A DNA stretch of 64,000 bases from Asterias rubens (lineage: Eukaryota): positions 9,982,001 to 10,046,000 of the forward strand of contig NC_047063.1 in assembly GCF_902459465.1 (NCBI RefSeq). The letters run 5' to 3'. A program made the position numbers and the translations under genes. Below, one piece after another: positions 9,133-32,779 of the stretch. The notes under the pieces were generated by a model. The model worked only from the letters and a program-made list of their open reading frames with translations, had not been told where the DNA came from and ran no database searches. Positions within the stretch are counted from its first letter, which is position 1. The number at the start of each line of letters is the position of its first letter.

Positions 9133-11371
9133 ATGGAGAAAGCAAATGCTCCAAAATTGAAGTACATGTACATGTTATTGATCACGTTTGCGTTAGGCAT
9201 CATGTAAGTATTTTTTATAAGAACAATATTATCCAGTAAGTCTGATTATTATTAATATATTATCAAGTAAAGTCTGAACATACCAAGACCCAGTAACTGG
9301 GGCGCTGTACTCCTTTTTTTCGAAATTTTGACCAACCGAGAATGTCAACATTTCGGAAAAAGGAGTACAGCGCCCCAGTTACTGGGTCTAACTCTCTTTT
9401 AACATCGGTCTCTTCGCTAAATGGCTTTCTTTTAACGGCAATTGGACACTTTCGGTAAACAGTATTGTTCAAAGGCCCACACTTCGTGTATCACAACTTA
9501 TAATATATATTAAATAACAAACCTGTGAAAATTTAGGCTCAATCGGTCATCGGAGTCGGGAGAAAATAACGGGAAAACCCACGCTTGTTTCCGCACGTTT
9601 CACCGTGTCTGACATGTGTTGTCTGACATGTGTTTACTATAATCCGTAATTCTCGTTGTCGAGAATTGATAATTTTTTTAATGTTTTTTCAAAAAGTCAA
9701 TTATTTCATGGAATAATATTTCAAGACAAGTCTTTTACCATTGCCTTCTGTAAACCCCGTAAGTTATTTGTAAATCTGTGGACTTTTACTTTTGTTTCTG
9801 TTCTGAAAGTGTATAGGCCCCTAATGGATTTAACAATACATCAGTCTCTTCACTGTGAAGAGACTCGATGTTAATGAGAGTCATTTACAGCTCAACAAGG
9901 TGGGCTAGGTTTTAACTCTTCGCCAGATGTGTTTTGTAATTGTACGATTTTATTTATGATTTTCTGGTATTTGAATTCTCTCTGAGACAGATTTGTATCC
10001 CCGGGTAGTAGTACAGGAGTGAGCTCTTCGCCAGATGAGTGTGGATCAACTCTTCGTGCTGGAATGGGATTGATATCGTCTCCGGTCAAGCCGGGGTTTC
10101 CCATCCAGTACCCTGCCGGCCTCCAATGTGAGTGGACTCTTACTGCTCCAGCGAGTCGCCGTGTGAAATTGCAGTTTTCGGAGTTCGACTTGCAATCTAC
10201 CAGTACCAGCTTGTGCAAGTTAGTCTATCAATTGTCTTCACAAGACGCGTTTATATCTCAGTTTTCTAAAGAAAATTAGGCTTTTAAAGGCCCTGTTCAT
10301 GTTTGGTGTATCCCATCATAAGCATAAAATAACAAACCAGTGACAATTTGGGCTCAATTGGTCATCAAAGTTGCGAGAAAATGATAAAAGAAAAAGCACC
10401 CTTGTTGGACGAATTTGTTTGCTGTCAGATAGGAATAAAAGACTTCTAGCTAGAAGTCTTTTAATATTTTAGTGAGAAATTAACTCTTTCTCAAAAACTA
10501 CGTTACTTCAGAGGGAGTTGTTCCCAAAATGGTTTATACTATCAACAGCTCTCCATTGCTTGTTACCAAGTCAATTTTTAAGTTTATATTTGTTTTGGGT
10601 AATGACCAAACATGTACCTTCCCTTTAAAGGTGTGGAATGAAAGACCAGCATTATAACGGGCCTGTCATGTATTCATGAATATTGAAAAAGAGGGTGAAG
10701 TTTAATATGTGAAGTTGTTGTCAAATGAAAATGTTGATGATGGAATAGTTTTCGGCCTTGCCCAAAGTCCATTTGGCAAAGAAAATATCTTCACAATACT
10801 ATGATTCCAAAGACATTGCTGGTCAAACTAAATAGTGCAGAAATATGGCGCGCTGTTTTAAATTACTAATGGGAGCGCGGTTACAATTCAAAGACCGAAC
10901 TCCGACGTGTTGATATACCCCCAGTAAATGCTAAATACTGAAATTTGCCACTGGTAGATGTGGGACATTTTCCTAAAAACACTGCATGCACAAACTCTGC
11001 ACTCACAACAAAAATTAACGTCTTAATAATGAGACAAATGGAAGAGTAGTATTGTTGAGTCATCTGTGCATTTTGCGATGGTTTGAGGGGTGTTTCCCGG
11101 CCCTCAATCTAAAATCACCTAGGCCTATACACTGTCACATAATATCATTTATTTTACTCATCATTTGATTGCTTATTTCCTGTATTGGTTGACAGAGATG
11201 ATTTTGTGGAGATTATTCAAGATGGTGACAATGCCGAGACGTCTGTATCCACAGTCTATTGCGGACAGCAACTACCGCCAATAACCGTCTCAGCGACTAA
11301 CGTATTGCGCCTGCGTTTCTTTACTGATGACGTCATCGGGGGCTCAGGATTCAGCGCTTTCTACGATACTG
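9133..11371 (+). CDS. Exons 1-3: N-terminal hydrophobic segment (signal peptide or anchor) and CUB domain
   Basis: MEKANAPKLKYMYMLLITFALGIIFVSP, then CG..L....G.ISSP..PGFPIQYPAGLQCEWTL...VKLQFSEFDLQ..C.DDFVEI...YCG...LRLRFFTD...GSGFSAFY, which fits the CUB consensus. Confidence 0.9.
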
Positions 11372-14300
11372 GTAAAAGATAGATAATTAATTTATTTGAA
11401 CTATCATGGACTAATTAATTTGTGGACTCTTGCATATAACCTTAAACAAAGTGTGTAATGTTGTTCGAACCAAAATACAAATCTGCTATCGTTGACAAAA
11501 TGGTGAAAATCCAACGATTTCTCATATTTGATGCGCCAAACCTTGTTTGGCTCGAGCAGAACCTTGGATCCTGACAATCATTCTTTTTTAGTTTTTAATT
11601 ACCATCGACTGAAAATTTGCGGACTGTTGTTCAAACCTAACAATAGCTGTTTCAAATGTAGGTTTAATTTGTTGGGTCAAATAGGGCAATAAATCTTAAC
11701 AAAATTGTAACAATCAAACAATTTCTCATTTCAGTTCCCATGGACAACCCTGATGCACCAATCCTTGTTTGGCTCGAGCAGAACCTCCTAGATTGGACAG
11801 CCAAACTGCAAAGCCTAACAGCAGATCCGGCGGACTATTTCTCGTCTGGAAACATAGTGACCAACACCCTTCTGAAATATAGTCCGGCCAACTGGACCGC
11901 ACTGGCAGCCGACTACCACGACCGTGTTTTCTTCTGGGCTGACCCACGCCTGAAGGTGATTTGGCGCGGTCAGTTGAAGGGGGAGCAACTCATTGCAGCG
12001 CCCCTGTATCGCGGCACCTCCTCGATGGTGCAGGGTATCGCCGTAGATTGGTTAGCTCGTACTGTCTACTGGACTGATGCTTCATACAACCACATCATGA
12101 TGAGTGATTATGAAGGGTCCAAACATACAGTCGTAATTGGGGAAGGATTGGAGGTTCCCACTGGTGTCGCCGTGCATCCACGACTTGGGTTAGTATGCCG
12201 AACGGGGTTTGGCAAATTTAATGTATAGTATGGATTAATGACAAAAACTTCTGGTAACTAGATATCGTACAGAATAGTGCAGTTTTGTTCACATTGCTTC
12301 TAGTGGTTAGTCTTCAAAAACAACAATAACAGCAGCAACAAGACTTCGTTCAATGCTGCAATTCAATTCCTTAAATGAAAGCTAATTATCTTTCTGGAAT
12401 CTATAAATAGAAATATTTTCAATTTAAATCGAAATGTGCCGGTCAAATCTGCCGAAAATTGGATCCGGTATCCTTGACGGACGTTCATACTGGGCAACAA
12501 CGCAAAAACCTACAATGAAATCAAATAATACTCATGACCTTTTAAATAAGTTATGCTCAGTGCTTAGTGCTGTATGACCAAACTTTCACGCTTTTACTGA
12601 GCTGCTTTTGTACTTCTAACATACAGGTGGCTGTTCTGGACCGATACGGGTACCGACCCAAGGATTGAACGCAGCCGTCTGGATGGACGAGAGCGTCGCG
12701 TAATAGTCCGGGGCTCTGAAGCCGGGTATGCGGTAGGACTCACCATTGACCACTCACGTGATAGGTAGGAACTTGTTGGGGTTCTGTATCTGTATCTGTT
12801 TTATTGAGCCTGCAAAGCAATTTTCTAAAGACACATCACACCAGCTTGTGTTCGCGGTGTGGACGGGATGACTCATGATTTTGGACGTGTTTAGTGAGAG
12901 TGTTTTTGAAGATGTCTTAGTATTGCTGGAAATCACACTACACGGTAAGTTCTGGTTTGCTTCTGATCGATCGGATCAAGGGAACTTGAATTTACAAGTC
13001 GCAACATAAAGTCAAATCAGCATCGGGTGGATTTTTTATAAAAATAAACAGTTGATGCTAGATTGATTGGAATGAATGATTGGCATACCTTAGGACTACG
13101 CTTCGAAAGAAACCAAAGTTACACAAAAATCTTGCCTTTTTAGTACCAGTGTCCTGCCGGAGATTCTGTCCCCAAATTGGAAAATGACCTGGGGTCTGGA
13201 GGAGAAGGATCCAACAGAGGGGGCCATCAGAAGCTCTGTTCTTCCTATAGACCTTATCCCAAATACTCAGGCAGGCGCAGTAGGTGTGGAGTTAGGTGCA
13301 TTCTGGGATAGTTAGGGATCAAATTTGATCCATAGCTATCCTGGAATGCACCTCATTAAATAACATTTGGCGCTTGGGCAATGGGTATTTGCGAAAAGGT
13401 CTATGGGGGAACAGAATCTCCAATAGTGTATTTTGGCAACCCAAACCAGAAACATTGGTCATCGGTTGGGCGTTTGTGTGTTCGGTTGAGCGTGGTGACA
13501 CGCTGTTCAGACCAACCGGTAACCAACTTGTTTTGGTTGGGCTTTTGCTGGTGTCGCCAAAATGCACTCCAGGGGGCAGAATCTCTTGCCACACACCGGC
13601 TAACATCACTTATTGTATTATTTTGGGCAGGTTATACTGGACATCTCGGAGTCTGGACGGTATGAGGAGCTCTATCTATTGGGCAACTACTGATGGACAG
13701 TCTGTAACGGTGTATACAGCAGTCGACTACAACCTCTACAGGTTTAACGATTTAACCCTGTACAAGGTAAGGCATAATTTCATCAAAGAATAGTTTCATG
13801 AAGGGTGAAGGAATTAAAGAGGGTGTAATAGGCAAATATTGGGACACATTAAGATCGTTCGAAATTTATGTAAGCTGCAGTTAGACCCAGTAATGCTTCA
13901 CACATCATTTTAGAAAGTTTTGGAAATAATTATTTTTAATTACAGGATTACCTCTACGTTACCGACTCAACAAATCAGCTACATTGCTACTTGAAGGATG
14001 AGGTCAGGGGTCACTACTTCACCTTTAACCTCACACCACGTTTACCATTTGGCATTACTACGTACGCTGGAAACAACCAGAATTGGCGATCATGTGAGTT
14101 AACATCATTGTGTGTCCGTTTTTGAAATGGGTGTTGAAATTTGAAATTTTCGTAAGGTTCCGGGCATTGTGTAACATTTGTGTAACACTTTTGAAGCATT
14201 CGTACATTTGTCTTTATTATTTCATACATTATTCAACAGGGTTCACCCCTACTCTTTCAAGAAATGTGTTTTACCTCCGAAGGGGCATCAAATGCCAAGA

Positions 14301-17300
14301 CCAGGGAAATAGAGGCCACGGCCTTCGTGTAATTCCATGCCTCAAAAAATGCCAATTCTAGCCAAACCGGTTACTCAGTATGAAGAAAATTATTCCTGTA
14401 ATTGCAGTCTTCTCTGCCAAGATACATTCGTTCAATCGAATTTACATGTTAGAATAAAAAAATGTGTGTTTTCTTTGCAAGCAATTTGCATTTTGTATAT
14501 TTTACTAATATTACTATTTAACTTCTGTATTTTACTAATTCACAACAGTAGTATTTATGATCTTCAATATTGAAATTTTGTTGACGGTACTTTGTTTTAC
14601 ATCATAATTTTGTGGATTTGCTGCATGCGCACGATTATAGTTAATAATAGTGATATGGCTGATTGAGTCATCATTCAAACACATTGATCATCCATACTGT
14701 ATTTAAAGGCAGTGAACACTATTGGTAATTACTCAAAAAAGGTTATTAGCATAAAGTGTTACTTGGTAAATGGGGAGAGGTTGATAGTATAAAACATTGT
14801 AAGAAACGGCTCACTCTGAAGTCAAGTAGTTTTCGAGAAAGAAGCAATTTTCCACGAATTTGATTTCGAGACCTCAGAATTAGAATTTGAGGTCTCGCAA
14901 TCAAGCATCTATAAGCACACAACTGCGTGTGACAAGGGTGTTTTTTCTTTCATTATTATCTCGCAACTTCGACAACCAATTGAGCTCAAATTTTCACATG
15001 TTTGTTATTTTATGCATATGTTGAGATACATTAAGTGAGAAGACTGGTCTTTGACAATTACCAATAATGTCTGTCCAGTGTCGTTAACCATGATTTAACA
15101 AAACAACTTATTTTTCAATCTCTGATGACAATTATACAGCTGGTTGTGATGCAAATCCATGTGAGTTTCTCTGTGTCAGTGATGGAGGGGATGCATACAG
15201 TTGTTTGTGTCAACATGGATTCACTGCAATGCAGGACGGAACATGTGTCACAGGTACGGATAAATATATCTAATTATTTCTTCTTTTACTGTAGAAATAC
15301 CAAGTGCATGCACCTTCTGTGTTCCTGGGCCTGATGATGAAACTTAGCCCTGTTAGCATTAGATTTGAATTTAACCGAGACCATTGGTAACATTCCAATG
15401 TGTAAACATTACCAGTGGATTACTTGGATTATACAACTGACTATTTATAAACACAGGCCAGGTCTGGGATCATCAGGCAGCATGCTTTTTGTTCCCCGGA
15501 CTCACCTTACCTCTAATGGTGATAGGCCCTTCTCTAATCTTGCCCCCACCTCTGGAACTCTCTGCCTCAAAGTCTAAGAGATACACATGACATTTCTCAC
15601 TTTTCATCTTTCATCTTTTCAGACTGGCCTTTGAACACATCTGAGATTTCTTTTAGTGACCTGGAGCGGCGCCTTTGAATTTTTTTTACAGAGAAAGAGC
15701 GCCTTACAAATGCTGTGTTTTATTTATTATTATTTACATGAGGGCACTACGCCAGTGACCTTCAACCGGATGTGACAAAATACATGCCCTATAGCTTTTA
15801 ATCAAAGGTTGAAGGGAAGCATATAGCAAATAAAAGGAAGAAAGTAACACCAAATGGTGGCCGGTTAAACTACCATTGGGCTCAATTAATTTACATGTAG
15901 TTACCTGGGTGACATTTGCCTGGGCTGTTCACAGGCTTAAAATGGTCTAGTCACCATTTACCCCCACGTTTGTACATGTGGATACCAGTAGCATTTAACT
16001 AACTGAAGCCACGTTTGCTTGATTTCTTGAAAAAGATAAAACTTTGTACATAGGTGTGGTACTCGCTGCTAAAATATAGGATTCAAACTGTCTCTAGCTA
16101 CTGGGCAATCTCGGTGGTCTAGTTGTCAAGACACTGCTCCAGATGCAAAGGTCATGGGTTTGAATCCCACCCGAGTAGTTGTGATTTTGTTTCACAGGGC
16201 TCGGGAAATTACTGAGTATCACTGCTAACACACAGTGTATAAAGTTAAAACCAAACTTAATATTCGTTATATTCTTGTTGTCTTACTTCAATCAAGACTC
16301 TGACATTCAGGTTCCACCACCCAAGGTATTTGTGCTAGGCCGAACCAGTATCTGCATGTATCCAGACAACATCCAAGACCTACCATCGCATCCTGGTCAG
16401 TGCATCCTGACAGATTTACCCGAAGCAGTCGCAATGGCTACCGACCAAGGGGAAGGGATATTGTTTTACAGCACACTCCAAGACAACATTATATACAGCA
16501 TAAAACTACGCAGCAATGAGAGATCTGTGGAAGTTATTGGTGGAACGACTGAAGTCAATGGTAATGCTTAATGTATTTTTTTTCTTACTTTGATATTGAA
16601 AATCGCTGTTACTTTTGTTCCAATTAACGTGGATTTATTTTTTGTAAAGCCTGTCAAACTATGTTTGTTGGAGTGTTGGGGAATTTGTTTGTTTGTTTGT
16701 TTATTTGTTTGTTTGTTTGTTTGTTTGTTTGTTTGTTCGTTTGTTTGTTTGTTCGTTCATTAGTTTGTTCATTAGTTTGTTCATTCGTTCTTTCATTCGT
16801 TCGTACGTTCGTTCAGTTTTTTTGTTTTTGTTTTTGAAAAATTGCACAATATAAGGATAATTTTCATAAGAAATTGCAAATCTCTTTTTGTACAAATGTT
16901 GGATACTGTATGAATTATTGTCAAAGTTTTCAGCAAGTTTCAGTACACATACGTACATACAACTAAGCATCTGTAAAGCGTCTTTTCAACAAGATCAAAG
17001 GGCTGGACAAGCAAAATGGAACTAAGCTACAACATACATGATATATTACATTTGATACGAACAGGGTGATGCCCCAGCATATTTAAGTGATCTTGTGCAG
17101 ATGTACACCCCAGGACATCGTAGCTTTTTGTTAAGTTAGTATATTTTTCTTATTTTGTTTTGCTATTTTGATCGCTTAATAGCTGTTCTTTTGTAGAGCA
17201 GCCCCATGAGTGACGCTTGCGGCGGATACCGGCGTTTTAAAAGTGTCCATTATTATTATTATTATTAATATTATTTTAAGAGATTTTTTGAAAAATGGCA

Positions 17301-20300
17301 GAGAGGAGGTAGTTTCATAATGACACAATATTATTAGCACTGATGACTAATGTCAGATTATAGAAGTGCCATTTTGCATTCACAAAGTAATGTGGCGAGA
17401 TACACCACTTTATCCATATTAATAAAACCAGCTCTTATATAGCGCAGTTCCAAAAAAATTACCAATGCACTTAAAACATAGCACTGGCTATTTATTAATC
17501 TTCTGAACATCATAGGTATTGCCGTAGACTGGCTTGACAAACTGCTCTATTGGACTGATTCTCGCTTGAACCATATTGCTGTGTCGAAGTACGACGGCAC
17601 GCACCGAACAATCCTTCTGAGTGACGATGTCAGACAGCCCGGACACATCGTTGTGGATCCTCATGCAAGGTATGGGTACAAAGTTTATACTGGACAGATT
17701 TGAGCCAAGAGGCTAGTAGTTTTGGTGTCGGGCCGAAAAAGTCCAGCTGTCTTTTAAATAAAAGTAAATTCTAGCATTCCTAATTGCCCTCCCCTAAATA
17801 CTGCCCTCTCTTGAGTCTTAAAGGAGCTAAATTACTTGCAAAAATACAGCAAATACAGGAACAACACAAAATAATTGCACCTACCATGGAGGAAGGAAAC
17901 TGTCTACTTAATATATTTAACTAGGGTTTGCATAAATTAATAAAGACACTTGTGACACTGATTTTCAATGAAGTGCTGAAACTGGCAAAAAGTTTGGTCT
18001 TTGGACTGCTGACCTTTTGTCTGCTACAGTATCTGGCTATTGTAAGCTGTGAGGGTCAGAGTCTACACATGTTGCAAGCATGGTCTTAGTCAAAATGACA
18101 TCTATTGTAAAAAAACAAGCAGCACAACTTGTGTCTGAGTTATTCAATGATCAAATGAATGTAGACACCTACTAAGTCGGTGTCTTTGTAGCAAATTCTG
18201 ACAGTTTTACCTCATTTTTTGCCACGATTGATTTTAGTAATAATTGTAAAACAATTAATATATCATTCTTGTGAAGTGAACTCATTCCATGAACCAATGC
18301 ACTCTAGAGACATACTTATAAAATGAACATTTTTTAAGGAGTTGTCAATCACTAGTTCTTTTCAGAGGCAACACTTTCAAAAGAGATACGGTGGTGGTGC
18401 TATCCCAAATCTCACCATACAAAGTTTTAAATCCTGCTGACATTTCTTGAAGCAACACGTGACAAAATTTCACAAGATGAAGTGAAATATCTGGCTGGAG
18501 AAACATTTGAAAGTCACATGCCAAGCATCGGAAAAAAATATTTGAATTATTTCTCATTTTCTTTGTCTCTTCTTTTAATTCTTAAGATTTATATTCTGGA
18601 CCTACCTTGGATCCTCAGTGGAGATTGAACGAGCAGCCCTCGATGGTAGTAACCGCGTGGTGATTGTAAGGGGTGTTCTGGAGGCCGACGCTCTGACAAT
18701 AGACTTCGACAGTCAAGTGTGAGTACTATTAAACCACAAATCTGTCTACCCAAACTGCGTACCCTACACTTCACTGCACTAATACAAAGGTGGAAGTCCA
18801 AATTACGACATATGTCTCGGGTACACCCATTGTGTGTTACCGATAACTGTTCCTTATCTTCAGAATAAATCTTACTCTTGCAATCTGTGTGTTCTTATTT
18901 GCACTTGTATGCCTGTTATCAATGACCTATTTAAATGAAGCCTGGGAGAGATGATAGTAAGATAACAATGAACAATGGCATCCGTGTCGACTGTACAAAC
19001 GTTGCTGCTGAGATCTTCAAACTTTATTACAGTCAAATTTATCTGATCCCATTGTTCAATAAAGTAGGATAAGTTCGTCCTCTTTTTTTGTTTTATGTGG
19101 TGTTCTGTTCTACACAAATTATGAATGGTTACATTTTTGCAGTTTGTTCCCTCTCAAAAGATAGTAAATCAATTTCAAATGCATTATTAATATTTTCTGG
19201 TATTAAAGGCAGTGGACACTATTGGTAATTACTCAAAACAATTATTAGCATGAAACCTTACTTGGTAACGAGTAATGGGGAGAGGTTGATAGTATAAAAC
19301 ATTGTGAGAAACGGCTCCCTCTGGAGTAACGTAATTTTTGAGGAAGAAGTATTTTTCCACGAATTTGATTTCGAGACCTCAAGTTTAGAATTTGAGGTCT
19401 CAAAATCAATCATCTGAAAGCACACAACTTAGTGTGACCATGGGTCGACAAGGGTGTTTTTTCTTTCATTATTATCTCGCAACCGATTGAGCTCAATTTT
19501 TCACAGGTTTGTTATTTTATGCATATGTTGAGATACACCAAGTGAGAAGACTGGTCTTTGACAATTACCAATAGTGTCCACTGTCTTTAGGTGAAGTTAC
19601 CGGTAATCACTGTAGCCAACAAACCTGAGGACACCAGTAAACAAGGGTGATTGCTACAAATGTATGTGAACTTGAAACACCAGGTTTAAACCTTACTCTT
19701 GTATGATAAGCGTACTCTGTTCTTTTTACTTGCACTACCAATCCTACACAGGACCACATGAAGGACAAAGTATTTATGATAAAGTATCTTGCTCACAAGT
19801 ACCAAGGACACAAGTACCAAGGACACAAGTACCATGACTGCAAGGCCCTTTTCATTTTGCAATAGAACACTTCAAGTGAAAATCATGAAGTCTATGAGAA
19901 CTTTTGGATAGAGCACAGCAAGGCCAAGACCAGGGCAATATATATATTTACCATGGCTTCCATGGCCTCTGTGTAATTACAGGCAAGGTATATCCATCAT
20001 CAATAATTGTCCTGTGATTATCTTTTTATCATTGGTTAAATATTATACACAAATTGAATGGCAATGAGGTAAAAAGTATACTTCTATTCCTCCAAGGGAC
20101 TTTGATGAATGACCAAAAGAGGGACCTTTTTCCCGAGGCCGAAGGCTGAGGAGGAGGTCTCTCTTCTGGTCAATTACAGGCCCTAGGGGGAATAGTCGTA
20201 CACTAGTTACCGAATTATGCCAGTCAATATGTGTTTTATAAGACACCTCGGTCTTAAATGTGAAATAAGAACAGAAATCTGGAAAAGAAAGGAAGTTTTG

Positions 20301-26300: not shown

Positions 26301-26774
26301 GGGCAAGCTCACAGTATTGAATCGTGTGATTTGTCCGGCAATTACCACCGTGTGATATCTCTCGGAATAGACTCCCGACCCTTTGGCATTCTCCTGAAAG
26401 GTCCTCATATTTACTGGACGGACCATCAGAGCTTCAATAAGCTGATGCAAGTCGATAAGGCAACGGGATCGAACGTGGTAGCGGTCAGTGGCCTGGACCT
26501 TGCCCGACCAAATGGTGTTTACAGCAGAAGCACATCAGCGAGTCCAGGTAAGAATACATGGATGCGGAGGATCTTTTTAAACTGGTTGTTTAATATTTTA
26601 ACTTTTTTGCCAGCTGTCTGTATTATCTAGACTCCTTAATTTATTTTACTGTGTAATACTTTGCTCTGTATAATTTTGTCTGGTCCAGACTTTTATTGTT
26701 CTTTCCCAGCGCCTTGAGGCAGATTTCTTCTGCTATTGTTTTTGCGCTTGATGAATTTCCCTTGGTTATTATTA

Positions 26775-26808: not shown

Positions 26809-29800
26809 GATCTCCTTCCTAAGCCCATTATTTTGTGCTACGTGATAAAGTGTGTGGTTTTAATTTGCAGTTAAAAGGGTGTCACTCGCGCACCCACTCA
26901 GCCGCCCACAGGCTCGCTTTTCCAAGTAATTCAAATTGCATGAAGGTGGCCATTACGTCTGTTGGTTCTGTTTTCAAATTTGTTTAAAGTCAGCCATCTT
27001 GATATAACTGATTCAACAAGTCGATTACCGTTTGGTTGGAACAGCCTTGTCACAGCGGATAAATTGAACATGCAAAATTGCTCAATTGATGACCAAAACA
27101 TAATTATGTTTCTGGTTACAATTTTGTTGAGAAACTTTAAAGTATAATTGTATACTTCTGTCCACAGTAAGTAATGCCTGTACAATCAACAATGGGGGAT
27201 GCAGCGGTCTGTGTCTTCCGAAGCCCTTTGGTCAATCGTGTTTCTGTCCTGATGGTCTACCGGCAAACGAAGATGGAAGCTGTAACACCATGAACACTGG
27301 TAAGATCTTGTTTAAAAATGGCCATACATACATTCATACATATCAGCATTTATATCCTAAGGTTACAAAGCTGGCTGTTGTTTGGGCAATTGGCTACTAG
27401 CGACTGTTGTAGGTGGCTTTTCTAGGGAGCAATGTCAACCACTAACAAGCCTAGCTATCCAGTCAATATTAATTGAGGCCCTCAGTAGAACCATACTTAA
27501 CTGTGCGTTGTGGGCGGAGCCTAATGGATCGGTCTATTGCAAAGGTTGTGAGTACACAGTGCTAACACACAAACTCAAGATGTCCAATGTGTAGTGGAGG
27601 CTGTGCCACGCTCACAATTTTGGTGGGCATTATGTTTAACGCCGCATGGCCTAAAATGCGCACTTCACTGAATAACGCACAGTGACATTGACCACCAAAA
27701 CGGCGCATTCAAGAATATTCTGATGCATTTTTTACCCAAATTGGATAAAACTGCTGGACTTTACCCCCTTGTGATTTTTTTTCAATTTTCAAGTTTCAAA
27801 CCTTCGGAAGTTTCAAACTTGCGCTAGCCAAAATATGCGACCTACCAACTTAAATTGAGCTGTGATATCCTTACTGTGTTTCACATTTAAATAATATGGC
27901 CATGTGATGTCCTCTCGACCAATCAGAATGACAATTTGCGCTCTCTATTTTTTGCACTGTACCCTTTTATCATTGTATACTGCTTTCATTTTAAATATGT
28001 ACCTCTAGTGGATCTTATGGTAATTTGTCCAGGATTTTTATAATTTACGTATTTTTTTTTTCTTTTTCATTATCTTACGAAATGTTTAGATGAACAAAGC
28101 TATAGTTTTTCTTATTTTGGTTGTAAAGCGCCATGGAGCATTTTTGCGATGGATTTGGCGCTTACTAAATGTTATATTTTTTATTAACATTATTAACAGC
28201 TGACTCAAAACTAGAAACACTTGAAATGACGGATCGACCACATGACGTCACACTCCAAGTGGGCATGGAGATCTTTCAGATGTGTGGCAGCAATCAACTG
28301 TCGGCCAACATTCAGTGGTGGAAGGACGGGGAGGAATTACCACTAGGTGAGTGTGACTTGATAAACGTCTTGACTTTATTTTACCAAATGGAAAGTGAAG
28401 TAATATAGACCTCAATAGTTCCACACCCTTGAGAGCATAGCGTCGACTCAGGACTTTAGGGTTTTTATTAGTGCAGTTTGTATGGATTTCATTAAACTGC
28501 TCTAGCACCTGTTGGAGCTCCTGGGGTGGATTTCACAAAGAGTTAAGACTAGTCTTATCTCGTGTTAGGATGAGTTACTCATCCTAACTTGGGACAAGCC
28601 TTAAGTTTTTTAATATCTCCTAGGACTAGTCCTTCCCTTTTTGTGAAATCGACCCCCCCCCCGTGTATCATGGGGTTAATTGATCAAGAGTTGTCTCCAA
28701 AGTAAGTGTTGACAAAAAGAAGGAAAAACATTTTCTAAGAAAAACATTTTGTTGTGGGTTTTGATTCGTTTTTGTCAAACTTTTCTTCATTTTTCACTTC
28801 ACAGCCTTTTGATTACTACAAGTATGAAATTGCAATTAATGACCTTATAGCAATGAGCCAACAATATGACCCCCAATCACGCAGTGAACTCCACTGGCTA
28901 TAAGAAAATGGATTCATAAAAAAAAAATTGTTTAACTTGTTGACTATTTTACAAATGACTCATTTTAACCGAGTTCTGACCTAGAAACAGTGGAGTGTGA
29001 TGTGAGTTGTTTTGTTTATTTGCAGGTCAATCGGGAAGCATGTATGTTTTTCCCGATGGCGGGTTGCAAATCCTAGACGTTGATGAAACACACAGAGGGC
29101 TTTATACTTGCATTGTGACTGCAGTCGACGGCAAGGCTGTGCAAGCACATGCAGAGTTCCGTAAGTTTTAAACTGTAATGTTTGGCTAAAAATGTGTATG
29201 TAAAACAAACAGATTCAGTCGTGAGACTGGTCTTTTTTAGGCTGGATGCATGTGTTTGACTTGCTTTGTGCGTAATGCTTAAAAGTGAATGTACACGCCA
29301 AGCAATGAACATAAATCCATGCATTTGTATTGCGTACTACATTATCCGTAAGGCCATGTGAATTTCATAGTGTGTATTATATATTCCTTTGTACAACACA
29401 TAGATTTCTGTCCTTATACTTTGTGAGAAAAATTTCATTTCAAAGTAATGTGGTTATGTTAAAAGATATCAGTTTTTACGTATCATACTTTGAATCTGAG
29501 ATTAGATTGTGTATTAGGGATTTATATTAAGCTCATTATGGCTAAAACAAAAGAAATGTTTTCTGAGCAATAACTAAAAATGGACTTGACGTCTCCAAAC
29601 TTGGTTTGTGGATTAGTCATGGGATCCCCCAGAAGCCTATTGTTTTGGGACCCACTCAGATAAATATTAAGCTCATTATGGCAAAACAATGACTCGAAAA
29701 GGACTTGGCGAAGCAACTCCAATCTCAGCGGAGCATTTGTTTTGTCAAAACACTGTTCTTAATCTTCCTGCAGCGACACACTCGCTCTGGATTTTCGGCA

Positions 29801-32779
29801 ATATTTCAAAAATGAACATTTGGAAATGAATTTTTCACATGTTGATTTTATGTTAAACATCTGCATTTATATAGGATTAAAACAATAAAACAGTTCCAAA
29901 AACCAAAGGTGTAGTTTGCCTTTAAACCATTTCCCTTTTCTCCTTCATACCACAGAATTTGATCCAGATGACGTATTCCTAGTTGAACCCAAAGCAGACA
30001 TTGTGATTCCAGAGGGGGGTGATGGTATTCTCATGTGCTCTGCAATAGAGGCCTCTTATGTTATCCACTGGGAAAAGAATGGCGAGCGAGTTCAATTCTC
30101 AGATATGATCCACATGTATTTGGGGGATAATCTGATAATTCGTCAGGCGATTATCTCAGACTCTGGGGTGTATACCTGTTATGCAGAAACGTTCGGTAGT
30201 GGGGTGCGTGTTGCAGAGGTACCTGCCAAGGTCACTGTAGAACCACAGCAAGTTGTAGAAGAAGGTAGGGTGACTCTCTACTTCATCCTCCATTAGGGTT
30301 GGAATGTTAAACCGTTTAACCATCACAAAAAATCCATCGAAAACCATCTCCTTATTACATTGTTTTACTAATTTCTCAAAAACTACAGCACCTCACCAAT
30401 TAATATTTTCAGGGAAGCTTTCTACTATCATTATCTTCAAACTGTGTAAGTTTAATGTAAGTCTGTGGACGTTGTGTTTATTGTCCTATAAAAAGTACAT
30501 AGACCATTTAAAGGCACTGGATACTATCGGTATTTGCTCAAAATATTTGTTAGCATAAAAACTTACTTGTTAGCAATCAATGGAGAGATGTTGTAAGTAT
30601 AAAACATTGTGAGAAACGGCTCCCTCTGAAATAACGTCGTTTTTGAGAAAGAAGATATTTCTCACTGAACAATTTGAAGTTGATTTCGAGACCTCAGTAT
30701 TTGATTTTGAGGTCTCGAAACCAAGTATCTGAAAGCACACAACTTCGTGTGACAAGGGTGTTTTTTCTTCCATTATAATCTTGCAACTTCGATAAACGAT
30801 TGAGTTCAAATTTTCACATGTTTGATATTTTGTGCATATGTTGAGATACACCAAGTGAGAAGACTGGTCTTTGACAATGTGTCCAGTGCCTTTAACAGTT
30901 AAACAAAACCACCAGTAAAAACAAACAAAAAGCTTTCAAATCTACAAGACCACTGGGTTTGTGGCTCAAAATGTTTACTAGACCAGAGTTCCCTTTTAAG
31001 AGACCAGAATCAAAATATTATCAAGCTTCCTGACCCAGTTTAGCGCACATTTTAAGATAACTGTCTTTATTTAAACAAGCACTACAACCAGTAAGAGAGT
31101 AATATTCTCCATAATATTGTTGATTTCATTTTTTTTTTTTTTGAGCGTATACTTCACTTTGTTATTGCTCATAGAATTGGAAGGTATTTTATCAGTTTCG
31201 AAGTCAACATCTGAACATTAATTTTTTGTTCAAAATGTTACTATTATTTTTCATTAGTTCAATTAAAAGACACGAGACTCTGGTGAAAAGTTTAAAGTGT
31301 AAAATTCTAGCCTTGCTCCACATATGTTCTTTGCAGGAAAAACATACTGGGCACTTTGAGACGCCCCTTGGGTGTGGTATAGTGCTATTATGATAAATAT
31401 ATGTTTTATCAATAGTAGTTACTGGTGTTTATACACTGCCATATTTTGATTACTAAATGCTGTAGGCCTACTTTATTTTGCCAACTGAAGCTTGCCCTTT
31501 TTTTTTTGCTGTATGTATTCCCCCATAATATTATTAGTTGTAATGTAGACAGCTGTATTTTGTGTGAAATGATGCACTTTATTTTGTTCACTTATACCTT
31601 TATCTTGTGGACAGGTTCTAAAGTTGATTTACAATGGATGAATTATTATCTAGTAACAATATTTGAGGTCATACTCTCTTGCTACTACAATTGTACACAA
31701 TTGATGTGCAAGTATTTCTATAATTCTAAATAACTATTTCGATGTGTTTATGAAATGTACAGGTATTGCTGATGCTGTTTCTAATGACTGTTTTTGTAAA
31801 TTGTACATTTCAGCTCTTAGCTGCCATATTGCAGTATTTTTTAATAAACCATTAAATAGGCCTAATGTTTATAATTTAATAACAATAGTACAAATTTTGA
31901 ATGAATAAATGACTCTTAACAATATCCTGTGTCTGTTGAATCCCTGCAGTGTGTGGCAGAGTAACATCACCCGAGGCAACCGGGATAGCATCAGAATCCA
32001 GTAACGCATCCCAGAGCGATATCAATGATGATGACCAGACCTTCCGCATCGTTGGAGGTACTACTGCCAAGATGGGATCGTCCCCTTGGATTGCACGTAT
32101 CTGGCTGACTAAAGACCGCAAACACTTCTGTGGTGGGACGCTAATCAACCGCTTCTGGGTCATCACAGGGGCTCACTGTATTACTGAATACTCGGTGACC
32201 AAGGCCGACATCAAGATCAGGCTGGGTGACCACGATATCTACTCGACGGAGGAAAACGAGCGACTGATTGGCGTGCAACACATCAAAGTGCACCAGAACT
32301 TTGTCGCGGATGATTATGACAGCGATATAGCCTTGATCAAGCTTGACGAACCGGTGGAGGAATTCACTGATTACCTCCGTCCAGTGTGCCTTCCCAGCAA
32401 AGCCTTGGCAAGGGCCCTCCTGGTTTCTGGGCGCAAGGGTACCGTCGCGGGTTGGGGTAGGCTGGTTGAGGGTGACAGTTCGCCCTATCCGCGTTTCCTT
32501 AAGGAGATAACGGTACCCGTTGTTGGACAGCGAAAATGCAAAGCCTCCACCAGATATCTTGTCACTGACAACATGTTCTGTGCTGGTTACAAGAAGAAAA
32601 CAGCTGATGCGTGTAGAGGCGATAGTGGGGGACCATTTTCCATAGAGCATGAGGGTAGATGGTATCAGCTTGGCATTGTTAGCTGGGGAGAGGGTTGTGC
32701 CAGGCAAGGCAATTATGGGTTTTATACCAGACTCATTAAGTTTCTCAAGTGGATGAATCAGTATATAGAAGAACATTAA
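9133..32779 (+). CDS. Mosaic secreted or signal-anchored serine protease zymogen: CUB - 3x(YWTD propeller-EGF) - 2x Ig - trypsin-like domain, 1592 aa
   Basis: 23 exons, all GT-AG and phase-consistent: 9133-9203, 9991-10218, 11196-11371, 11735-12188, 12627-12764, 13631-13766, 13946-14093, 15140-15253, 16297-16560, 17516-17669, 18587-18718, 21053-21167, 22156-22312, 22724-22852, 23907-24155, 25017-25176, 25846-25976, 26278-26547, 27168-27299, 28200-28346, 29026-29160, 29956-30264, 31950-32779. They sum to 4779 nt, one open frame ending in TAA. Confidence 0.9.
9286..9389. repeat. Near-perfect palindrome of about 104 bp (mini-MITE); half copy at about 35763-35806
   Basis: agacccagtaactggggcgctgtactccttttt...aaaaaggagtacagcgccccagttactgggtct. 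Confidence 0.75.
9440..9832. mobile_element. MITE family C (TTAA-type); related reverse partial copy at about 39028-39260
   Basis: gcaattggacactttcggtaaacag...ccattgccttctgtaaacccc..agttatttgtaaatctgtg matches the reverse complement of 39030-39250. Confidence 0.65.
10284..10628. mobile_element. MITE family A-related, reverse orientation
   Basis: ttaaaggccctg...ggtaatgaccaaacatgtaccttccctttaa; reverse-complement match to family A. Confidence 0.7.
11735..15253 (+). CDS. Exons 4-8: YWTD (LDLR class B) beta-propeller 1 and EGF-like module 1
   Basis: FFWAD, GIAVDWLARTVYWTD, LFWTD..PRIERSRLDG, LYWTS, LYVTD; then CDANPCEFLCVSDGGDAYSCLCQHGFTAMQDGTC. Confidence 0.9.
14703..15088. mobile_element. MITE family A
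   Basis: ttaaaggcagtgaacactattggtaatt...caattaccaataatgtctgtccagtgtcgttaa. Confidence 0.8.
15410..15735 (+). mobile_element. Degenerate 3' end of an L2-type LINE
   Basis: RPGLGSSGSMLFVPRTHLTSNGDRPFSNLAP..WNSLPQSLRD resembles the L2 ORF2 C-terminus; ends in agcgccttacaaatgctg...ttattatt. Confidence 0.7.
16103..16240 (+). mobile_element. tRNA-derived SINE
   Basis: A-box-like ggtggtctagttg and B-box-like ggtttgaatccc, followed by a non-tRNA tail actgagtatcactgctaacacaca that recurs at about 27550. Confidence 0.6.
16297..22852 (+). CDS. Exons 9-14: YWTD beta-propeller 2 and EGF-like module 2
   Basis: LFYS, GIAVDWLDKLLYWTD, FIFWTY..IERAALDG, LYFAE, LMWTE; then PCSDGMHDCEQLCLP..YICTCGIGYRLNEDETSC. 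Confidence 0.9.
16686..16812. repeat. (TTTG)n/(TTCG)n microsatellite
   Basis: Read directly from the sequence. Confidence 0.9.
16970..17270 (+). mobile_element. L2-type LINE 3' fragment
   Basis: GDAPAYLSDLVQMYTPGHR (G.AP.YL..L...Y.P.R motif) plus an (att)n tail at about 17250. Confidence 0.55.
19203..19590. mobile_element. MITE family A
   Basis: ttaaaggcagtggacactattggtaatt...aattaccaatagtgtccactgtcttta. Confidence 0.82.
21697..22070. mobile_element. MITE family A-related
   Basis: ttaaaggaactatagacactattggtaatt...gtgtccagtgcctttaa. Confidence 0.78.
22882..23272. mobile_element. MITE family A-related, reverse orientation
   Basis: ttaaaggcactgtacacgtttggtaagtgtcaaagaccag...gtaattaccaaacatgtaccttccctttaa. 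Confidence 0.78.
23907..27299 (+). CDS. Exons 15-19: YWTD beta-propeller 3 and EGF-like module 3
   Basis: GYDPIQGLVYWSD, VYWTD, LLWTR..IDKAFLDG, LYWTN..IESCDLSG, IYWTD; then NACTINNGGCSGLCLPKPFGQSCFCPDG...C. Confidence 0.9.
24234..24621. mobile_element. MITE family A, reverse orientation, followed by a fragment to about 24710
   Basis: ttaaagacactggaaactattggtaattgtcaaagaccag...aatagtgtccactgcctttaa. Confidence 0.82.
24735..24895 (+). mobile_element. SINE-like fragment
   Basis: tgtggattaggttttcagtc...gggttttccctgg...ggttttcctcccacatctaaaactg resembles a SINE body; recognised by pattern only. Confidence 0.4.
25274..25436. repeat. Imperfect inverted repeat (mini-MITE) in protease intron 16
   Basis: gcctctcttaatattcatgggtgacgtcataattcttacccaaaa...ttttgggttagaattgtgacgtactcatgcataaatattaagagaggc. 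Confidence 0.65.
26765..26808. repeat. (TTA)n microsatellite; others at 7835-7862 and about 17250
   Basis: Read directly from the sequence. Confidence 0.9.
28200..30264 (+). CDS. Exons 20-22: two immunoglobulin-like (I-set type) domains
   Basis: Ig1 (split over two exons): P.DVTLQVG...MC....IQWWKDGEEL...GLQI.DV....GLYTC. Ig2 (one exon): P.ADIVIPEGGDGILMC....IHWEKNG...LII......DSGVYTCYA. Confidence 0.88.
28521..28657. mobile_element. Small hairpin MITE family D; related pieces at 7151-7510, 34270-34520 and 2290-2345
   Basis: TIR GGGG(T)GGATTTCACAAAG...TTTGTGAAATCGACCCC; internal ctaggactagtcct motifs. Confidence 0.7.
30508..30895. mobile_element. MITE family A
   Basis: ttaaaggcactggatactatcggtatt...gtgtccagtgcctttaa. 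Confidence 0.82.
31950..32779 (+). CDS. Exon 23: linker Cys, activation peptide and complete trypsin-like serine protease domain in a single exon
   Basis: CGR...TFR|IVGG (Ile16 at 32048); His57 in TGAHC (32174), Asp102 in DSDIALI (32324), Asp189 (32606), Ser195 in GDSGGP (AGT, 32624), Ser214 (AGC, 32681), Tyr225 (32714). No intron across these 830 nt. Confidence 0.95.

What the first reader, a model, noticed from the sequence alone, without database searches (positions are those of the whole stretch)
9133..32779. Mosaic protease joining an LRP-like triple YWTD/EGF ectodomain, CUB and two Ig domains to a clotting-factor-like protease
Seen: one intact 1592-aa frame, CUB-(propeller-EGF)x3-Ig-Ig-activation peptide-protease. 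It has no LDLa repeats, no Gla, kringle or CCP modules, and no transmembrane segment after the N-terminal hydrophobic stretch. Established: tandem YWTD-EGF units are the ligand-binding platforms of LRP5/6, LRP4, LDLR and the EGF precursor, which are not proteases; the modular proteases I know (Nudel, corin, enteropeptidase, matriptase, MASP/C1r/C1s, factor C) use other domain sets. Inference: this is a secreted or signal-anchored recognition-plus-protease zymogen, possibly the trigger of an undescribed extracellular cascade (coelomic clotting or wound sealing, immunity, or egg-coat processing). I recognise no named protein with this architecture.
Basis: partly seen in the sequence, partly recalled or inferred. 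Interest (0 to 1): 0.85.

Follow-up and report, generated by a model that had tools for sequence, protein, structure and literature searches.

The report
Sea-star protease with LRP-type propellers
A real, transcribed sea-star gene encodes a secreted thrombin-like protease carrying three LRP-type beta-propellers; the design is conserved across echinoderms, public databases misname it "LRP4-like", and its function has never been studied.

Summary
A 23-exon plus-strand gene (9133-32779, all introns GT-AG) gives a 4779-nt frame of exactly 1592 aa: signal peptide, CUB, three YWTD propeller-EGF units, two Ig domains, an activation linker and a single-exon trypsin-fold protease. Transcript contigs from three runs join the EGF3, Ig and protease exons in one molecule. 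Annotated proteins of two other sea stars are colinear with exons 2-23. It is therefore one gene, not two.

The protease looks active: His/Asp/Ser triad, Asp189, an Arg-Ile-Val-Gly-Gly activation site and a linker cysteine. Human thrombin is its nearest solved relative by sequence and by predicted fold.

The architecture is not unique to this genome. Predicted orthologs occur in sea stars, brittle stars, sea urchins and crinoids, auto-named "LRP4/6-like" or "uncharacterized". The Ig-Ig-protease core is wider still (hemichordates, amphioxus, chelicerates, a brachiopod). A 2024 survey calls the CUB...Ig-Ig-protease forms "MASP-like".

I found no experimental work. My reading is a secreted zymogen whose propellers, CUB and Ig domains dock an Arg-specific protease onto an unknown extracellular target. 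I rate it a new variant of a known kind, of moderate interest. The scan's separate note on the protease exon's codon markers is confirmed.

The parts
9133..9203 (+). Exon 1: start codon and signal peptide (aa 1-24; charged n-region, then a hydrophobic stretch of about 16 residues)
   Evidence: The only hydrophobic 19-mers with mean KD above 1.59 start at residues 8-16. Orthologs have classic signal peptides.
9991..10218 (+). Exon 2: first half of the CUB domain
   Evidence: Pfam CUB 5.1e-09, profile 1-54; tblastn of P0009/P0151; splice choice.
11196..11371 (+). Exon 3: second half of the CUB domain
   Evidence: Pfam CUB 1.1e-07, profile 56-110.
11735..12188 (+). Exon 4: propeller 1, blades with FFWAD and VYWTD motifs
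   Evidence: Ldl_recept_b 9.8e-08; 65-68% identity to orthologs; held in the RNA runs X1, X2, X9, X10 that also hold the protease exon.
12627..12764 (+). Exon 5: propeller 1 (LFWTD blade)
   Evidence: Ldl_recept_b 7.7e-06.
13631..13766 (+). Exon 6: propeller 1 (LYWTS blade)
13946..14093 (+). Exon 7: propeller 1, last blade
15140..15253 (+). Exon 8: EGF module 1, flanked by phase-1 introns
   Evidence: EGF/FXa_inhibition hits around 4e-4.
16297..16560 (+). Exon 9: propeller 2, first blades
   Evidence: 55% identity to orthologs.
17516..17669 (+). Exon 10: propeller 2 (LYWTD blade)
   Evidence: Ldl_recept_b 6.4e-10.
18587..18718 (+). Exon 11: propeller 2 (IFWTY blade)
   Evidence: Ldl_recept_b 7.3e-04.
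21053..21167 (+). Exon 12: propeller 2 (LYFAE blade)
22156..22312 (+). Exon 13: propeller 2, last blade
22724..22852 (+). Exon 14: EGF module 2, flanked by phase-1 introns
   Evidence: FXa_inhibition 9.7e-08, EGF_LRP2 9.9e-06.
23907..24155 (+). Exon 15: propeller 3, first blades
   Evidence: Ldl_recept_b 4.6e-07; 71% identity to orthologs.
25017..25176 (+). Exon 16: propeller 3 (VYWTD blade)
   Evidence: Ldl_recept_b 1.8e-04.
25846..25976 (+). Exon 17: propeller 3 (LLWTR blade)
26278..26547 (+). Exon 18: propeller 3, last blades
   Evidence: Ldl_recept_b 1.2e-06.
27168..27299 (+). Exon 19: EGF module 3
   Evidence: FXa_inhibition 9.6e-08. Spliced to exon 20 in RNA contigs of four runs.
28200..28346 (+). 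Exon 20: Ig domain 1, first half
   Evidence: RNA joints 27299>28200 and 28346>29026; ortholog Ig hits.
29026..29160 (+). Exon 21: Ig domain 1, second half
   Evidence: weak Ig_3 hit.
29956..30264 (+). Exon 22: Ig domain 2 (I-set type)
   Evidence: I-set 6.4e-08, Ig_3 6.9e-08. Contiguous with exons 21 and 23 in contigs of X1, X2 and X8.
31950..32779 (+). Exon 23: activation linker plus the whole trypsin-fold protease domain and the stop codon, in a single exon
   Evidence: Trypsin 1.5e-62; thrombin 7.1e-64; RNA contigs.
31952..31954 (+). Cys1318 in the linker. It is inferred to pair with Cys1463 (chymotrypsinogen Cys122), which would tether the two chains after activation.
   Evidence: The Cys-Gly pair is invariant in 22 Ig-Ig-protease sequences (C203/G204).
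32045..32050 (+). Activation cleavage site Arg1349 | Ile1350 (TFR|IVGG)
   Evidence: P1 is Arg or Lys at the same place in the relatives where the automated scan found the site.
32174..32176 (+). Catalytic His57 (His1392). The His-loop cysteines Cys42 and Cys58 are present.
32324..32326 (+). Catalytic Asp102 (Asp1442)
32606..32608 (+). Asp189 (Asp1536), at the base of the S1 pocket; implies specificity for Arg/Lys
32624..32626 (+). Catalytic Ser195 (Ser1542), codon AGT
32681..32716 (+). Ser214 (codon AGC) through Tyr225 (codon TAT)

Best explanation
This is one protein-coding gene of a sea star. It encodes a secreted, 1592-residue mosaic zymogen of an S1 (chymotrypsin-fold) serine protease.

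Shown:
- The order of modules is signal peptide, one CUB, three complete YWTD propeller-EGF units of LRP type, two Ig domains, a roughly 30-residue acidic linker, and a protease domain on a single exon.
- The catalytic triad, Asp189, the Arg|Ile-Val-Gly-Gly activation site, the linker cysteine and the thrombin-like cysteine set are all present.
- The triad motifs and an Arg or Lys at P1 recur in most of the relatives checked.
- Every intron between the CUB, propeller, EGF, Ig and protease modules is phase 1, the classic signature of exon shuffling. The signal-peptide/CUB intron is phase 2.
- The protease belongs to an invertebrate Ig-Ig-protease family found in echinoderms, hemichordates, amphioxus, chelicerates and a brachiopod. 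Its closest solved relative is thrombin. Other members of the family carry different N-terminal heads.
- Four echinoderm classes carry the propeller head.

Inferred:
- After secretion, an upstream protease or self-cleavage cuts at Arg1349.
- The catalytic chain stays disulfide-linked to the large non-catalytic chain.
- The CUB, propellers and Ig domains act as docking platforms or exosites that bring an Arg-specific protease to a particular extracellular macromolecule or surface for limited proteolysis.
- The physiological setting is most likely humoral defence or wound response (complement-like or clotting-like). That last step is a guess, at about one chance in three.
For: - Gene model: 1592 aa, all introns GT-AG, phase-1 introns at the module borders from CUB onward.
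- Domains.
- One transcript: contigs of 6957, 4365 and 3472 nt join exons 19 to 23 without a break. Propeller exon 4 is held in RNA runs that also hold the protease exon.
- Colinear orthologs: 1591 and 1597 aa in Acanthaster and Patiria.
- Same architecture elsewhere: Amphiura, Diadema, Strongylocentrotus and Anneissia.
- Signal peptide only, with no second hydrophobic segment.
- Catalytic residues, activation site and linker cysteine are largely conserved across the family.
- Thrombin is the best solved match: 219 bits, E 7e-64. Only 64 PDB sequences reach 1e-60, and the 60 that are listed are all thrombin.
- The predicted Ig-Ig-protease structure of the Acanthaster ortholog has pLDDT 83.9. 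Both Ig domains and the protease are confident and the linker is disordered. The protease superposes on thrombin at TM 0.89, rmsd 1.5 A, 42% identity.
- Tree of protease domains: window + Acanthaster + Patiria at 100/99. An ambulacrarian clade (84/81) also holds the hemichordate CUB-CUB-Ig-Ig proteases and the holothurian Ig-Ig proteases. A chelicerate/brachiopod Ig-protease clade lies beside it.
Against: - There is no functional data of any kind: no tissue, no substrate, no activator.
- RNA evidence directly bridges only exons 19-23.
- Signal-peptide cleavage was judged by eye and hydropathy, not by a predictor.
- The propeller-bearing proteases do not resolve as one clade in the protease tree (a polytomy), so a single origin of the fusion is likely but not shown.
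- The Ca-binding residues typical of collagen-binding CUB domains are only partly kept and vary among orthologs. This weakens a MASP-like docking model.
Confidence: 0.8

Rival explanations
1. It is a complement-type initiator, a functional MASP analogue. The CUB and propeller head binds a soluble pattern-recognition molecule or a microbial or altered-self surface, and the Ig-Ig-protease unit then cleaves a C3-like thioester protein. This is a specific version of the physiological role, not a rival to the biochemistry.
For: - The Ig-Ig-protease core is what a 2024 survey calls MASP-like (MASPL), with two Ig domains in place of the two CCPs. The survey's list includes Tropilaelaps OQR79970.1, which sits in the chelicerate Ig-protease clade of my tree.
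- The protein has an N-terminal CUB, an AGY codon for Ser195 and a single-exon protease domain. From my own knowledge, the last two are features of the MASP-2/C1r/C1s lineage.
- Some echinoderm orthologs carry Sushi/CCP modules before the Ig pair.
- An oyster MASP-like protease without CCPs promotes C3 cleavage (PMC8605247).
Against: - The oyster enzyme has four CUB and three LDLa modules and no Ig, so it is not the same family.
- The nearest solved protease is thrombin, not a MASP.
- The His-loop disulfide is present, unlike MASP-2/C1r/C1s.
- The CUB Ca-site residues are not consistently kept.
- An unchecked scan note reports classical MASP-architecture genes elsewhere in this genome, so that role may already be filled.
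Confidence: 0.2
2. It is a clotting or wound-sealing protease. On this reading it is a thrombin-like enzyme of the coelomic fluid that converts a clottable or adhesive protein after injury, and the propellers hold it at the wound matrix.
For: Thrombin is the closest solved relative by sequence and by fold. Tyr225 and the AGY/AGY serine codons are present; from my own knowledge these are markers of clotting-type proteases. The activation and disulfide layout is that of a two-chain clotting enzyme.
Against: As described in the literature read here, echinoderm clotting is cellular and mediated by amassin, with no protease cascade reported (PMC9368803). The protein has no Gla or kringle modules. 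The 60-loop is four residues shorter in the alignment to thrombin. No proteomic report of this protein in coelomic fluid was found.
Confidence: 0.1
3. It is a developmental or matrix-signalling protease. The LRP4/5/6-like propellers bind the kind of ligand such propellers bind elsewhere (agrin-, Wnt-antagonist-, laminin- or nidogen-type partners), and the protease processes that ligand or its neighbours.
For: The best non-protease matches of the head are LRP4, LRP6 and LRP1B propeller arrays, at 27-31% identity over 57% of the protein. The three propellers are old and distinct, at 24-30% identity to one another. They are colinear with a three-propeller annelid protein, as expected of a captured ligand-binding array.
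Against: The argument is purely by analogy. No ligand-contact residues were tested and no expression data are available.
Confidence: 0.15
4. It is a type II membrane-anchored ectoprotease: the N-terminal hydrophobic stretch is an uncleaved signal anchor.
For: The hydrophobic stretch is fairly long, about 16 residues, and follows a Lys-rich n-region.
Against: A small, polar c-region (SPGSS) follows the stretch. Orthologs in brittle star and sea urchin have short, typical signal peptides, and Acanthaster has the same SPG motif. No cytoplasmic domain worth the name precedes the stretch.
Confidence: 0.08
5. It is an artefact: two neighbouring genes (an LRP-like gene and a protease gene) read together, or a dead gene.
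For: Run X9 assembled exons 19-22 and exon 23 as separate contigs.
Against: Three runs bridge exon 22 to exon 23 in single contigs of 3.5-7 kb. All 23 exons are intact and in frame. Gene models in at least eight other echinoderm species place propellers, Ig domains and the protease in one protein.
Confidence: 0.02

Closest known systems
Predicted echinoderm orthologs. Examples: Acanthaster planci XP_022109029.1 'LRP4-like' (1591 aa); Patiria miniata 'LRP4-like' (1597 aa); Amphiura filiformis 'LRP2-like' (1594 aa); Diadema 'LRP6-like' (1693 aa); S. purpuratus LOC115919137 and LOC593350 (about 1835 aa); Anneissia japonica 'LRP2-like / complement C2-like' (1047-1104 aa)
   Same: They share the same order of modules. 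The sea-star proteins are 76-81% identical in the parts compared and colinear with exons 2-23.
   Different: Sea-urchin, brittle-star and crinoid forms add Sushi/CCP modules before the Ig pair. The longer sea-urchin forms also have a tail of about 120 residues after the protease, and the brittle-star model lacks the CUB. None has been studied, and their names come from automatic annotation.
MASP-like (MASPL) / Ig-Ig-protease family of invertebrates. Hemichordate, chelicerate, brachiopod and amphioxus proteins with CUB or other heads followed by Ig-Ig-protease; surveyed in PMC11312191
   Same: Two Ig domains lie directly before the linker. The Cys-Gly linker motif, a P1 Arg or Lys and the single C-terminal protease are shared. 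The protease domains group together in the tree.
   Different: Their heads are CUB-CUB, CUB-EGF-CUB, TSP1 or EGF/LDLa. Within this family, only echinoderm members were found to carry YWTD propellers.
Vertebrate thrombin (prothrombin)
   Same: It is the nearest solved protease: about 42% identity, TM 0.89. The thrombin-like cysteine set, Tyr225, Asp189, the interchain cysteine and a long matching stretch around Trp215 are all shared.
   Different: There is no Gla domain and there are no kringles. The 60-loop is four residues shorter, and another loop shows a further three-residue gap in the alignment. The Ser214 codon is AGC; from memory, thrombin uses TCN. The protease is on a single exon. This is not an ortholog in the architectural sense.
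MASP / C1r / C1s (CUB-EGF-CUB-CCP-CCP-protease)
   Same: The overall logic matches: a recognition head, then two small beta-sandwich modules, then the protease. It also shares the N-terminal CUB, the AGY codon for Ser195 and the single-exon protease domain.
   Different: It has one CUB only, propellers instead of EGF-CUB, and Ig instead of CCP. The His-loop disulfide is present, and thrombin rather than MASP is the best solved match.
LDL-receptor family (LRP4, LRP5/6, LRP1B, LDLR)
   Same: Tandem six-bladed YWTD propellers are each followed by an EGF module. Identity to LRP4 and LRP6 arrays is 27-31%.
   Different: There are no LDLa ligand-binding repeats, no transmembrane segment and no cytoplasmic tail, and the protein ends in a protease. 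The database names 'LRP4-like' and 'LRP6-like' are therefore misleading.
Ptychodera flava XP_070534296.1 'LRP2-like' (4285 aa)
   Same: It is another predicted ambulacrarian protein that combines YWTD repeats with trypsin-fold protease domains.
   Different: It is a SEA/CUB x10/LDLa x9/Frizzled mosaic with two protease domains and no Ig pair, resembling corin or enteropeptidase. The YWTD signal is weak and the model may be a fusion.

Membership tests
S1 (chymotrypsin-fold) serine proteases, active members | His57, Asp102 and Ser195 triad in the conserved motifs | tested here: met
   TGAHC, DIALI and GDSGGP at aa 1392, 1442 and 1542. The motifs recur in most relatives. Pfam Trypsin 1.5e-62.
S1 (chymotrypsin-fold) serine proteases, active members | Zymogen activation site, Arg/Lys followed by Ile-Val-Gly-Gly | tested here: met
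   TFR|IVGG at aa 1349/1350.
S1 (chymotrypsin-fold) serine proteases, active members | Measured catalytic activity | not testable with these tools
   This needs recombinant protein.
Ig-Ig-protease / MASP-like (MASPL) family | Two Ig domains immediately N-terminal of the linker and protease | tested here: met
   Exons 20-22. The fold model gives both Ig domains pLDDT of about 86-95.
Ig-Ig-protease / MASP-like (MASPL) family | Protease domain groups with other family members | tested here: met
   Tree: ambulacrarian clade 84/81, beside the chelicerate/brachiopod clade 93/90. The node joining the two is weak (64/32).
MASP / C1r / C1s proper | CUB-EGF-CUB-CCP-CCP-protease architecture | tested here: not met
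   One CUB, no CCP, and three propellers instead.
MASP / C1r / C1s proper | AGY-lineage traits: AGY codon for Ser195, single-exon protease, no His-loop disulfide (the definition is from my own knowledge) | tested here: inconclusive
   AGT codon and single exon are met, but the His-loop cysteines are present.
Prothrombin | Gla domain plus two kringles N-terminal of the protease | tested here: not met
   No such Pfam hits in the exon pieces or in the ortholog.
Prothrombin | Thrombin insertion loops (60-loop, autolysis loop) | tested here: not met
   There is a 4-residue gap at the 60-loop and a 3-residue gap in another loop in the alignment to thrombin.
Vitamin K-dependent factors VII/IX/X/protein C | Gla-EGF-EGF head | tested here: not met
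Vitamin K-dependent factors VII/IX/X/protein C | Marker set Ser195 AGY, Ser214 AGY, Tyr225 (Krem and Di Cera scheme, recalled from memory) | tested here: met
   AGT, AGC and TAT. Vertebrate FX and protein C nevertheless fall outside the Ig-protease clade, with weak resolution.
LDL-receptor family | YWTD propeller-EGF units | tested here: met
   Three units, each with 4-5 recognisable YWTD-type motifs.
LDL-receptor family | LDLa (class A) repeats, a transmembrane segment and a cytoplasmic tail | tested here: not met
   No Ldl_recept_a hit. No hydrophobic segment beyond the N-terminus, and the protein ends with the protease.

The most novel reading that the evidence does not exclude
The three propellers are a built-in receptor for a defined extracellular ligand or surface. 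On this reading the protein is the self-contained sensor-protease that starts an echinoderm-specific proteolytic cascade (defence, wound sealing or matrix signalling). Its Ig-Ig-protease core would then represent the ancestral stock from which the vertebrate thrombin protease domain was recruited.
Probability: 0.15. Interest if true: 0.8.

Novelty: new variant of a known kind. Interest (0 to 1): 0.5.

Why it matters
- **A new use for a known module.** YWTD propeller arrays are known as ligand platforms of endocytic and signalling receptors. Here the same platform sits on a secreted clotting/complement-type protease in four echinoderm classes, which suggests an origin in the echinoderm stem lineage. 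That is a different way of aiming a protease, and it offers a handle for finding the target.
- **Origins of thrombin and MASPs.** The protease is the closest invertebrate look-alike of thrombin seen here, yet it sits in the family that others call MASP-like. The gene is therefore relevant to how the vertebrate clotting and complement proteases arose.
- **Annotation.** The public names ('LRP4-like', 'LRP6-like', 'LRP2-like') hide a protease family from anyone searching echinoderm immunity or haemostasis genes.

Tried and rejected
- **Accession and locus-name searches** in the paper library found nothing.
- **Keyword searches** on echinoderm proteases, coelomic-fluid proteomes and sea-star adhesive proteins found no description of this protein.
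- **Ponczek et al. 2012** (J Mol Evol 74:319, PMID 22752046) could not be read here. Its existence is confirmed from reference lists, but what I say about its content is from memory.
- **Mapping the three propellers onto particular LRP4 or LRP6 propellers** failed. The best matches are not colinear and the scores are close. Only an annelid three-propeller protein is colinear.
- **Ca-binding residues of the CUB domain,** as a test of MASP-like docking, were inconclusive. The first acidic ligand is Gln in sea stars and the others vary among urchins.
- **Separating propeller-bearing from propeller-less echinoderm proteases** in the protease tree failed; they form a polytomy.
- **Vertebrate thrombin and MASP sequences** could not be added to the tree, because no tool returned them as usable sequences.
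- **Rfam** found nothing in the window.
- **Flanking open frames** gave no secure Pfam hits.
- **The full spliced protein** could not be handed to the database tools, because it has no reference. Exon pieces and the Acanthaster ortholog were used instead.
Full report

Yes. Plus-strand open frames between 9.1 and 32.8 kb contain, in order, recognisable pieces of every claimed module. Pfam scans of the individual frames gave:
- CUB in two halves (profile positions 1-54 and 56-110);
- Ldl_recept_b repeats in three separate groups of exons;
- three EGF/FXa_inhibition modules;
- Ig (I-set and Ig_3 at about 6e-08);
- a complete Trypsin domain at 1.5e-62.

I chose splice sites by combining donor and acceptor scores with alignment to two sea-star orthologs, then corrected two of them from RNA. 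The resulting model has 23 exons and GT-AG at every intron. Its coding sequence is 4779 nt, giving 1592 residues and one terminal stop.

**2. Is it one gene?**

Transcript contigs from three independent runs of the same species (6957, 4365 and 3472 nt) lie on exons 19, 20, 21, 22 and 23. Their record coordinates run on without a break across each intron. The joints fall at 27299>28200, 28346>29026, 29160>29956 and 30264>31950.

In the longest contig, about 3.6 kb lies upstream of exon 19. Exons 1-18 supply 3226 nt of coding sequence, so the contig has room for all of them plus roughly 0.4 kb of leader. About 1.66 kb lies beyond position 32900, which implies a long 3' UTR.

Propeller exon 4 is held in RNA runs that also hold the protease exon. 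Independently, the annotated proteins of Acanthaster planci (1591 aa) and Patiria miniata (1597 aa) align colinearly to exons 2-23, and to nothing else in the window.

One caveat remains. Direct RNA bridging was obtained only for exons 19-23, because only one read-laying run of 6 kb was allowed.

**3. What does the protein look like?**

- **Residues 1-24 or so:** a Lys-rich start and a hydrophobic stretch of about 16 residues, followed by a small polar stretch. This is the only strongly hydrophobic segment in the protein. Orthologs have plain signal peptides at the same place. I read it as a cleaved signal peptide, so the product is secreted. The protein ends eight residues after the protease domain, with no anchor.
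- **The head:** one CUB, then three propeller-EGF units (about aa 159-489, 490-806 and 807-1120). Each unit has four or five recognisable YWTD-type motifs.
- **The propellers are old copies.** They are only 24-30% identical to one another, so they are not a recent internal triplication.
- **Two Ig domains,** an acidic linker of about 30 residues, and the protease follow.
- **Intron phases.** Every intron between the CUB, propeller, EGF, Ig and protease modules is phase 1. This is the usual signature of module shuffling in extracellular proteins. The intron between the signal peptide and the CUB is phase 2.

**4. Is the protease functional, and of what kind?**

The features of an active, Arg/Lys-specific enzyme are all present:
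- His1392, Asp1442 and Ser1542 in their usual motifs;
- Asp1536 at the S1 base;
- Gly216 and Gly226;
- the activation site TFR|IVGG (Arg1349|Ile1350).

The domain has seven cysteines. One more lies in the linker, in a Cys-Gly pair that is invariant in 22 family members. This is the pattern of a two-chain enzyme: His loop, 168-182, 191-220, and an interchain bond to Cys122. Thrombin has the same set.

The triad motifs and an Arg or Lys at P1 recur in most echinoderm, hemichordate, chelicerate and brachiopod relatives I checked. That argues for maintained catalysis.

The codons are AGT for Ser195 and AGC for Ser214, and residue 225 is Tyr. This confirms the separate scan note on this exon.

Against all solved structures, the best sequence match is human thrombin (219 bits, E 7e-64). 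Only 64 PDB sequences reach 1e-60, and the 60 that are listed are all thrombin.

A structure prediction of the Ig-Ig-linker-protease part of the Acanthaster ortholog gave confident Ig and protease domains and a disordered linker (mean pLDDT 83.9, pTM 0.59). The protease superposes on thrombin at TM 0.89, rmsd 1.5 A and 42% identity.

The alignment shows a four-residue gap at the 60-loop and a further three-residue gap in another loop. "Clotting-factor-like" is therefore fair, and "thrombin-like" more precise. It is not a prothrombin, because it has no Gla domain and no kringles.

**5. Relatives.**

An exhaustive profile search with the protease exon found a 1591-aa protein at 74% identity and a 1693-aa protein at 51%, both with C-terminal proteases. 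Pfam shows that both have the same architecture.

A full-length search then found the same design in:
- sea stars (Acanthaster, Patiria);
- a brittle star (Amphiura);
- sea urchins (two Diadema species, and Strongylocentrotus with at least three loci);
- a crinoid (Anneissia).

Several of these have Sushi modules inserted before the Ig pair. The sources name them "LRP4-like", "LRP6-like", "LRP2-like", "complement C2-like" or "uncharacterized".

The two sea-cucumber proteins found are short, with Ig-Ig-protease preceded by about 200 residues.

A search with the hemichordate relative showed that the Ig-Ig-protease core is widespread:
- CUB-CUB-Ig-Ig-protease in acorn worms;
- CUB...Ig-Ig-protease in spiders, scorpions, ticks and mites;
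- TSP1-Ig-Ig-protease in Lingula;
- EGF/LDLa forms in amphioxus.

Among the 335 proteins fetched, propeller and protease co-occur only in echinoderms, with one exception. That exception is a 4285-aa acorn-worm mosaic of quite different build.

In a maximum-likelihood tree of 36 protease domains:
- the window groups with the two sea-star orthologs (100/99);
- an ambulacrarian clade (84/81) holds all the echinoderm and hemichordate forms;
- the chelicerate and brachiopod forms are a neighbouring clade (93/90);
- vertebrate factor X and protein C fall outside, with weak support.

The propeller-bearing forms are not resolved from the other echinoderm proteases. The fusion most likely dates to the echinoderm stem, since it is present in crinoids and eleutherozoans, but a single origin is not proven.

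**6. Literature.**

Nothing was found for the accession numbers or locus names. Nothing was found in echinoderm protease, coelomic-fluid or adhesive-footprint papers either.

Two pieces of prior work bear on the core. First, a 2024 survey of complement components (PMC11312191) describes MASP-like proteases, mainly of arthropods, molluscs, annelids and hemichordates, that lack the two CCP domains. In some of them, two Ig domains take the CCPs' place. Its sequence list includes the Tropilaelaps protein that falls in my chelicerate Ig-protease clade.

That survey also cites an oyster MASP-like enzyme that promotes C3 cleavage. On reading the original paper (PMC8605247), that enzyme is CUB x4-LDLa x3-protease without Ig, so it is only a functional analogue.

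Second, Ponczek et al. 2012 surveyed amphioxus, acorn-worm and sea-urchin genomes for haemostatic proteases. As I recall its abstract, it reported thrombin-like proteases with Ig-like domains. I could confirm only that the paper exists, not its content.

Neither source, as far as I could read, mentions a propeller-bearing form.

**7. How it most likely works.**

Shown: the architecture, the secretion signal, an intact activation site and catalytic machinery, conservation, and transcription.

Inferred: the proenzyme is secreted and is cut after Arg1349 by an upstream protease or by itself. The catalytic chain then stays tied through Cys1318 to a non-catalytic chain of about 1320 residues. The CUB, the three propellers and the two Ig domains act as docking surfaces that restrict an otherwise trypsin-like specificity to one macromolecular target.

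This is the logic of MASPs, C1r/C1s and the clotting factors. The Ig pair stands where those enzymes have CCPs, EGFs or kringles. What the target is cannot be told from sequence.

I rank the physiological roles as follows:
- complement-like initiation, about 0.2;
- matrix or developmental ligand processing suggested by the LRP-like head, about 0.15;
- clotting or wound sealing, about 0.1;
- the remainder unknown.

A membrane-anchored form is unlikely (0.08), and a gene-model artefact is practically excluded.

**8. Verdict.**

The novelty claim needs trimming. The gene has predicted orthologs across echinoderms, and it belongs to a protease family already noticed by others. However, the propeller-protease combination has not been described or studied in anything I could read, and public names conceal it.

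I class it as a new variant of a known kind. It is of moderate interest for the evolution of clotting and complement proteases and for echinoderm extracellular biology.

Noticed in passing
window 27488-27681, 28458-28651, 30204-30979 (introns); similar frames at 7894-8034(-), 10484-10654(+), 14746-14922(-), 19229-19425(-), 23102-23387(+), 24313-24469(+), 30570-30854(-), 59201-59660(+): A high-copy interspersed repeat lies in both orientations in several introns and in the flanks. Summed RNA-contig depth over it reaches 10^4 to 10^6, against about 20-300 over the exons. The copies share a pseudo-frame of the type '...NYVTSEGAVSHNVLY...SPLLVT...'. It is probably a SINE- or MITE-like element; Rfam found no match.
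   Followed up: partly
window 59492-64000: Satellite-like tandem arrays with units of 98/140/163 bp, then a 31/55/333-bp hierarchy from about 62.0 kb to the window end. The 31-bp unit contains the octamer ATTTGCAT in some 70 copies, in a very AT-rich stretch (GC 0.26-0.29).
   Followed up: no
window 43125-43255: A run of 131 N (assembly gap or masked). It was left untouched.
   Followed up: no
window 3970-4329 (-): An open frame with a weak methyltransferase-like match (Methyltransf_11, E 0.003, below the curated cut-off). It may be an exon of an upstream neighbour gene on the minus strand.
   Followed up: partly
P0119 (Ptychodera flava XP_070534296.1, 4285 aa): A giant predicted acorn-worm mosaic with SEA, ten CUB, nine LDLa and two Frizzled domains, weak YWTD repeats and two trypsin-fold domains. 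It is named 'LRP2-like'. It is either a corin/enteropeptidase-like giant or a fused gene model.
   Followed up: partly
P0165 (Owenia fusiformis, 1348 aa): An annelid protein with three propeller-EGF units, no LDLa repeats and no protease. Its propellers are colinear, one to one, with the three propellers of the window's protein at 31-35% identity. It is a possible model for the kind of gene that donated the head.
   Followed up: partly
P0153-P0156 (S. purpuratus and Diadema, 1833-1873 aa): The longer sea-urchin paralogs carry about 120 extra residues after the protease domain. At least some of them also have a Sushi module between the last EGF and the Ig pair. Several paralogs lie on the same chromosome-scale contig in S. 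purpuratus.
   Followed up: no
window 30866-31977: In run X9, a low-depth contig (6.9, against 282-291 on the exons) covers most of intron 22 and runs into exon 23. In that run the exons on either side were assembled as separate contigs. This may be unspliced precursor RNA or DNA carry-over.
   Followed up: no
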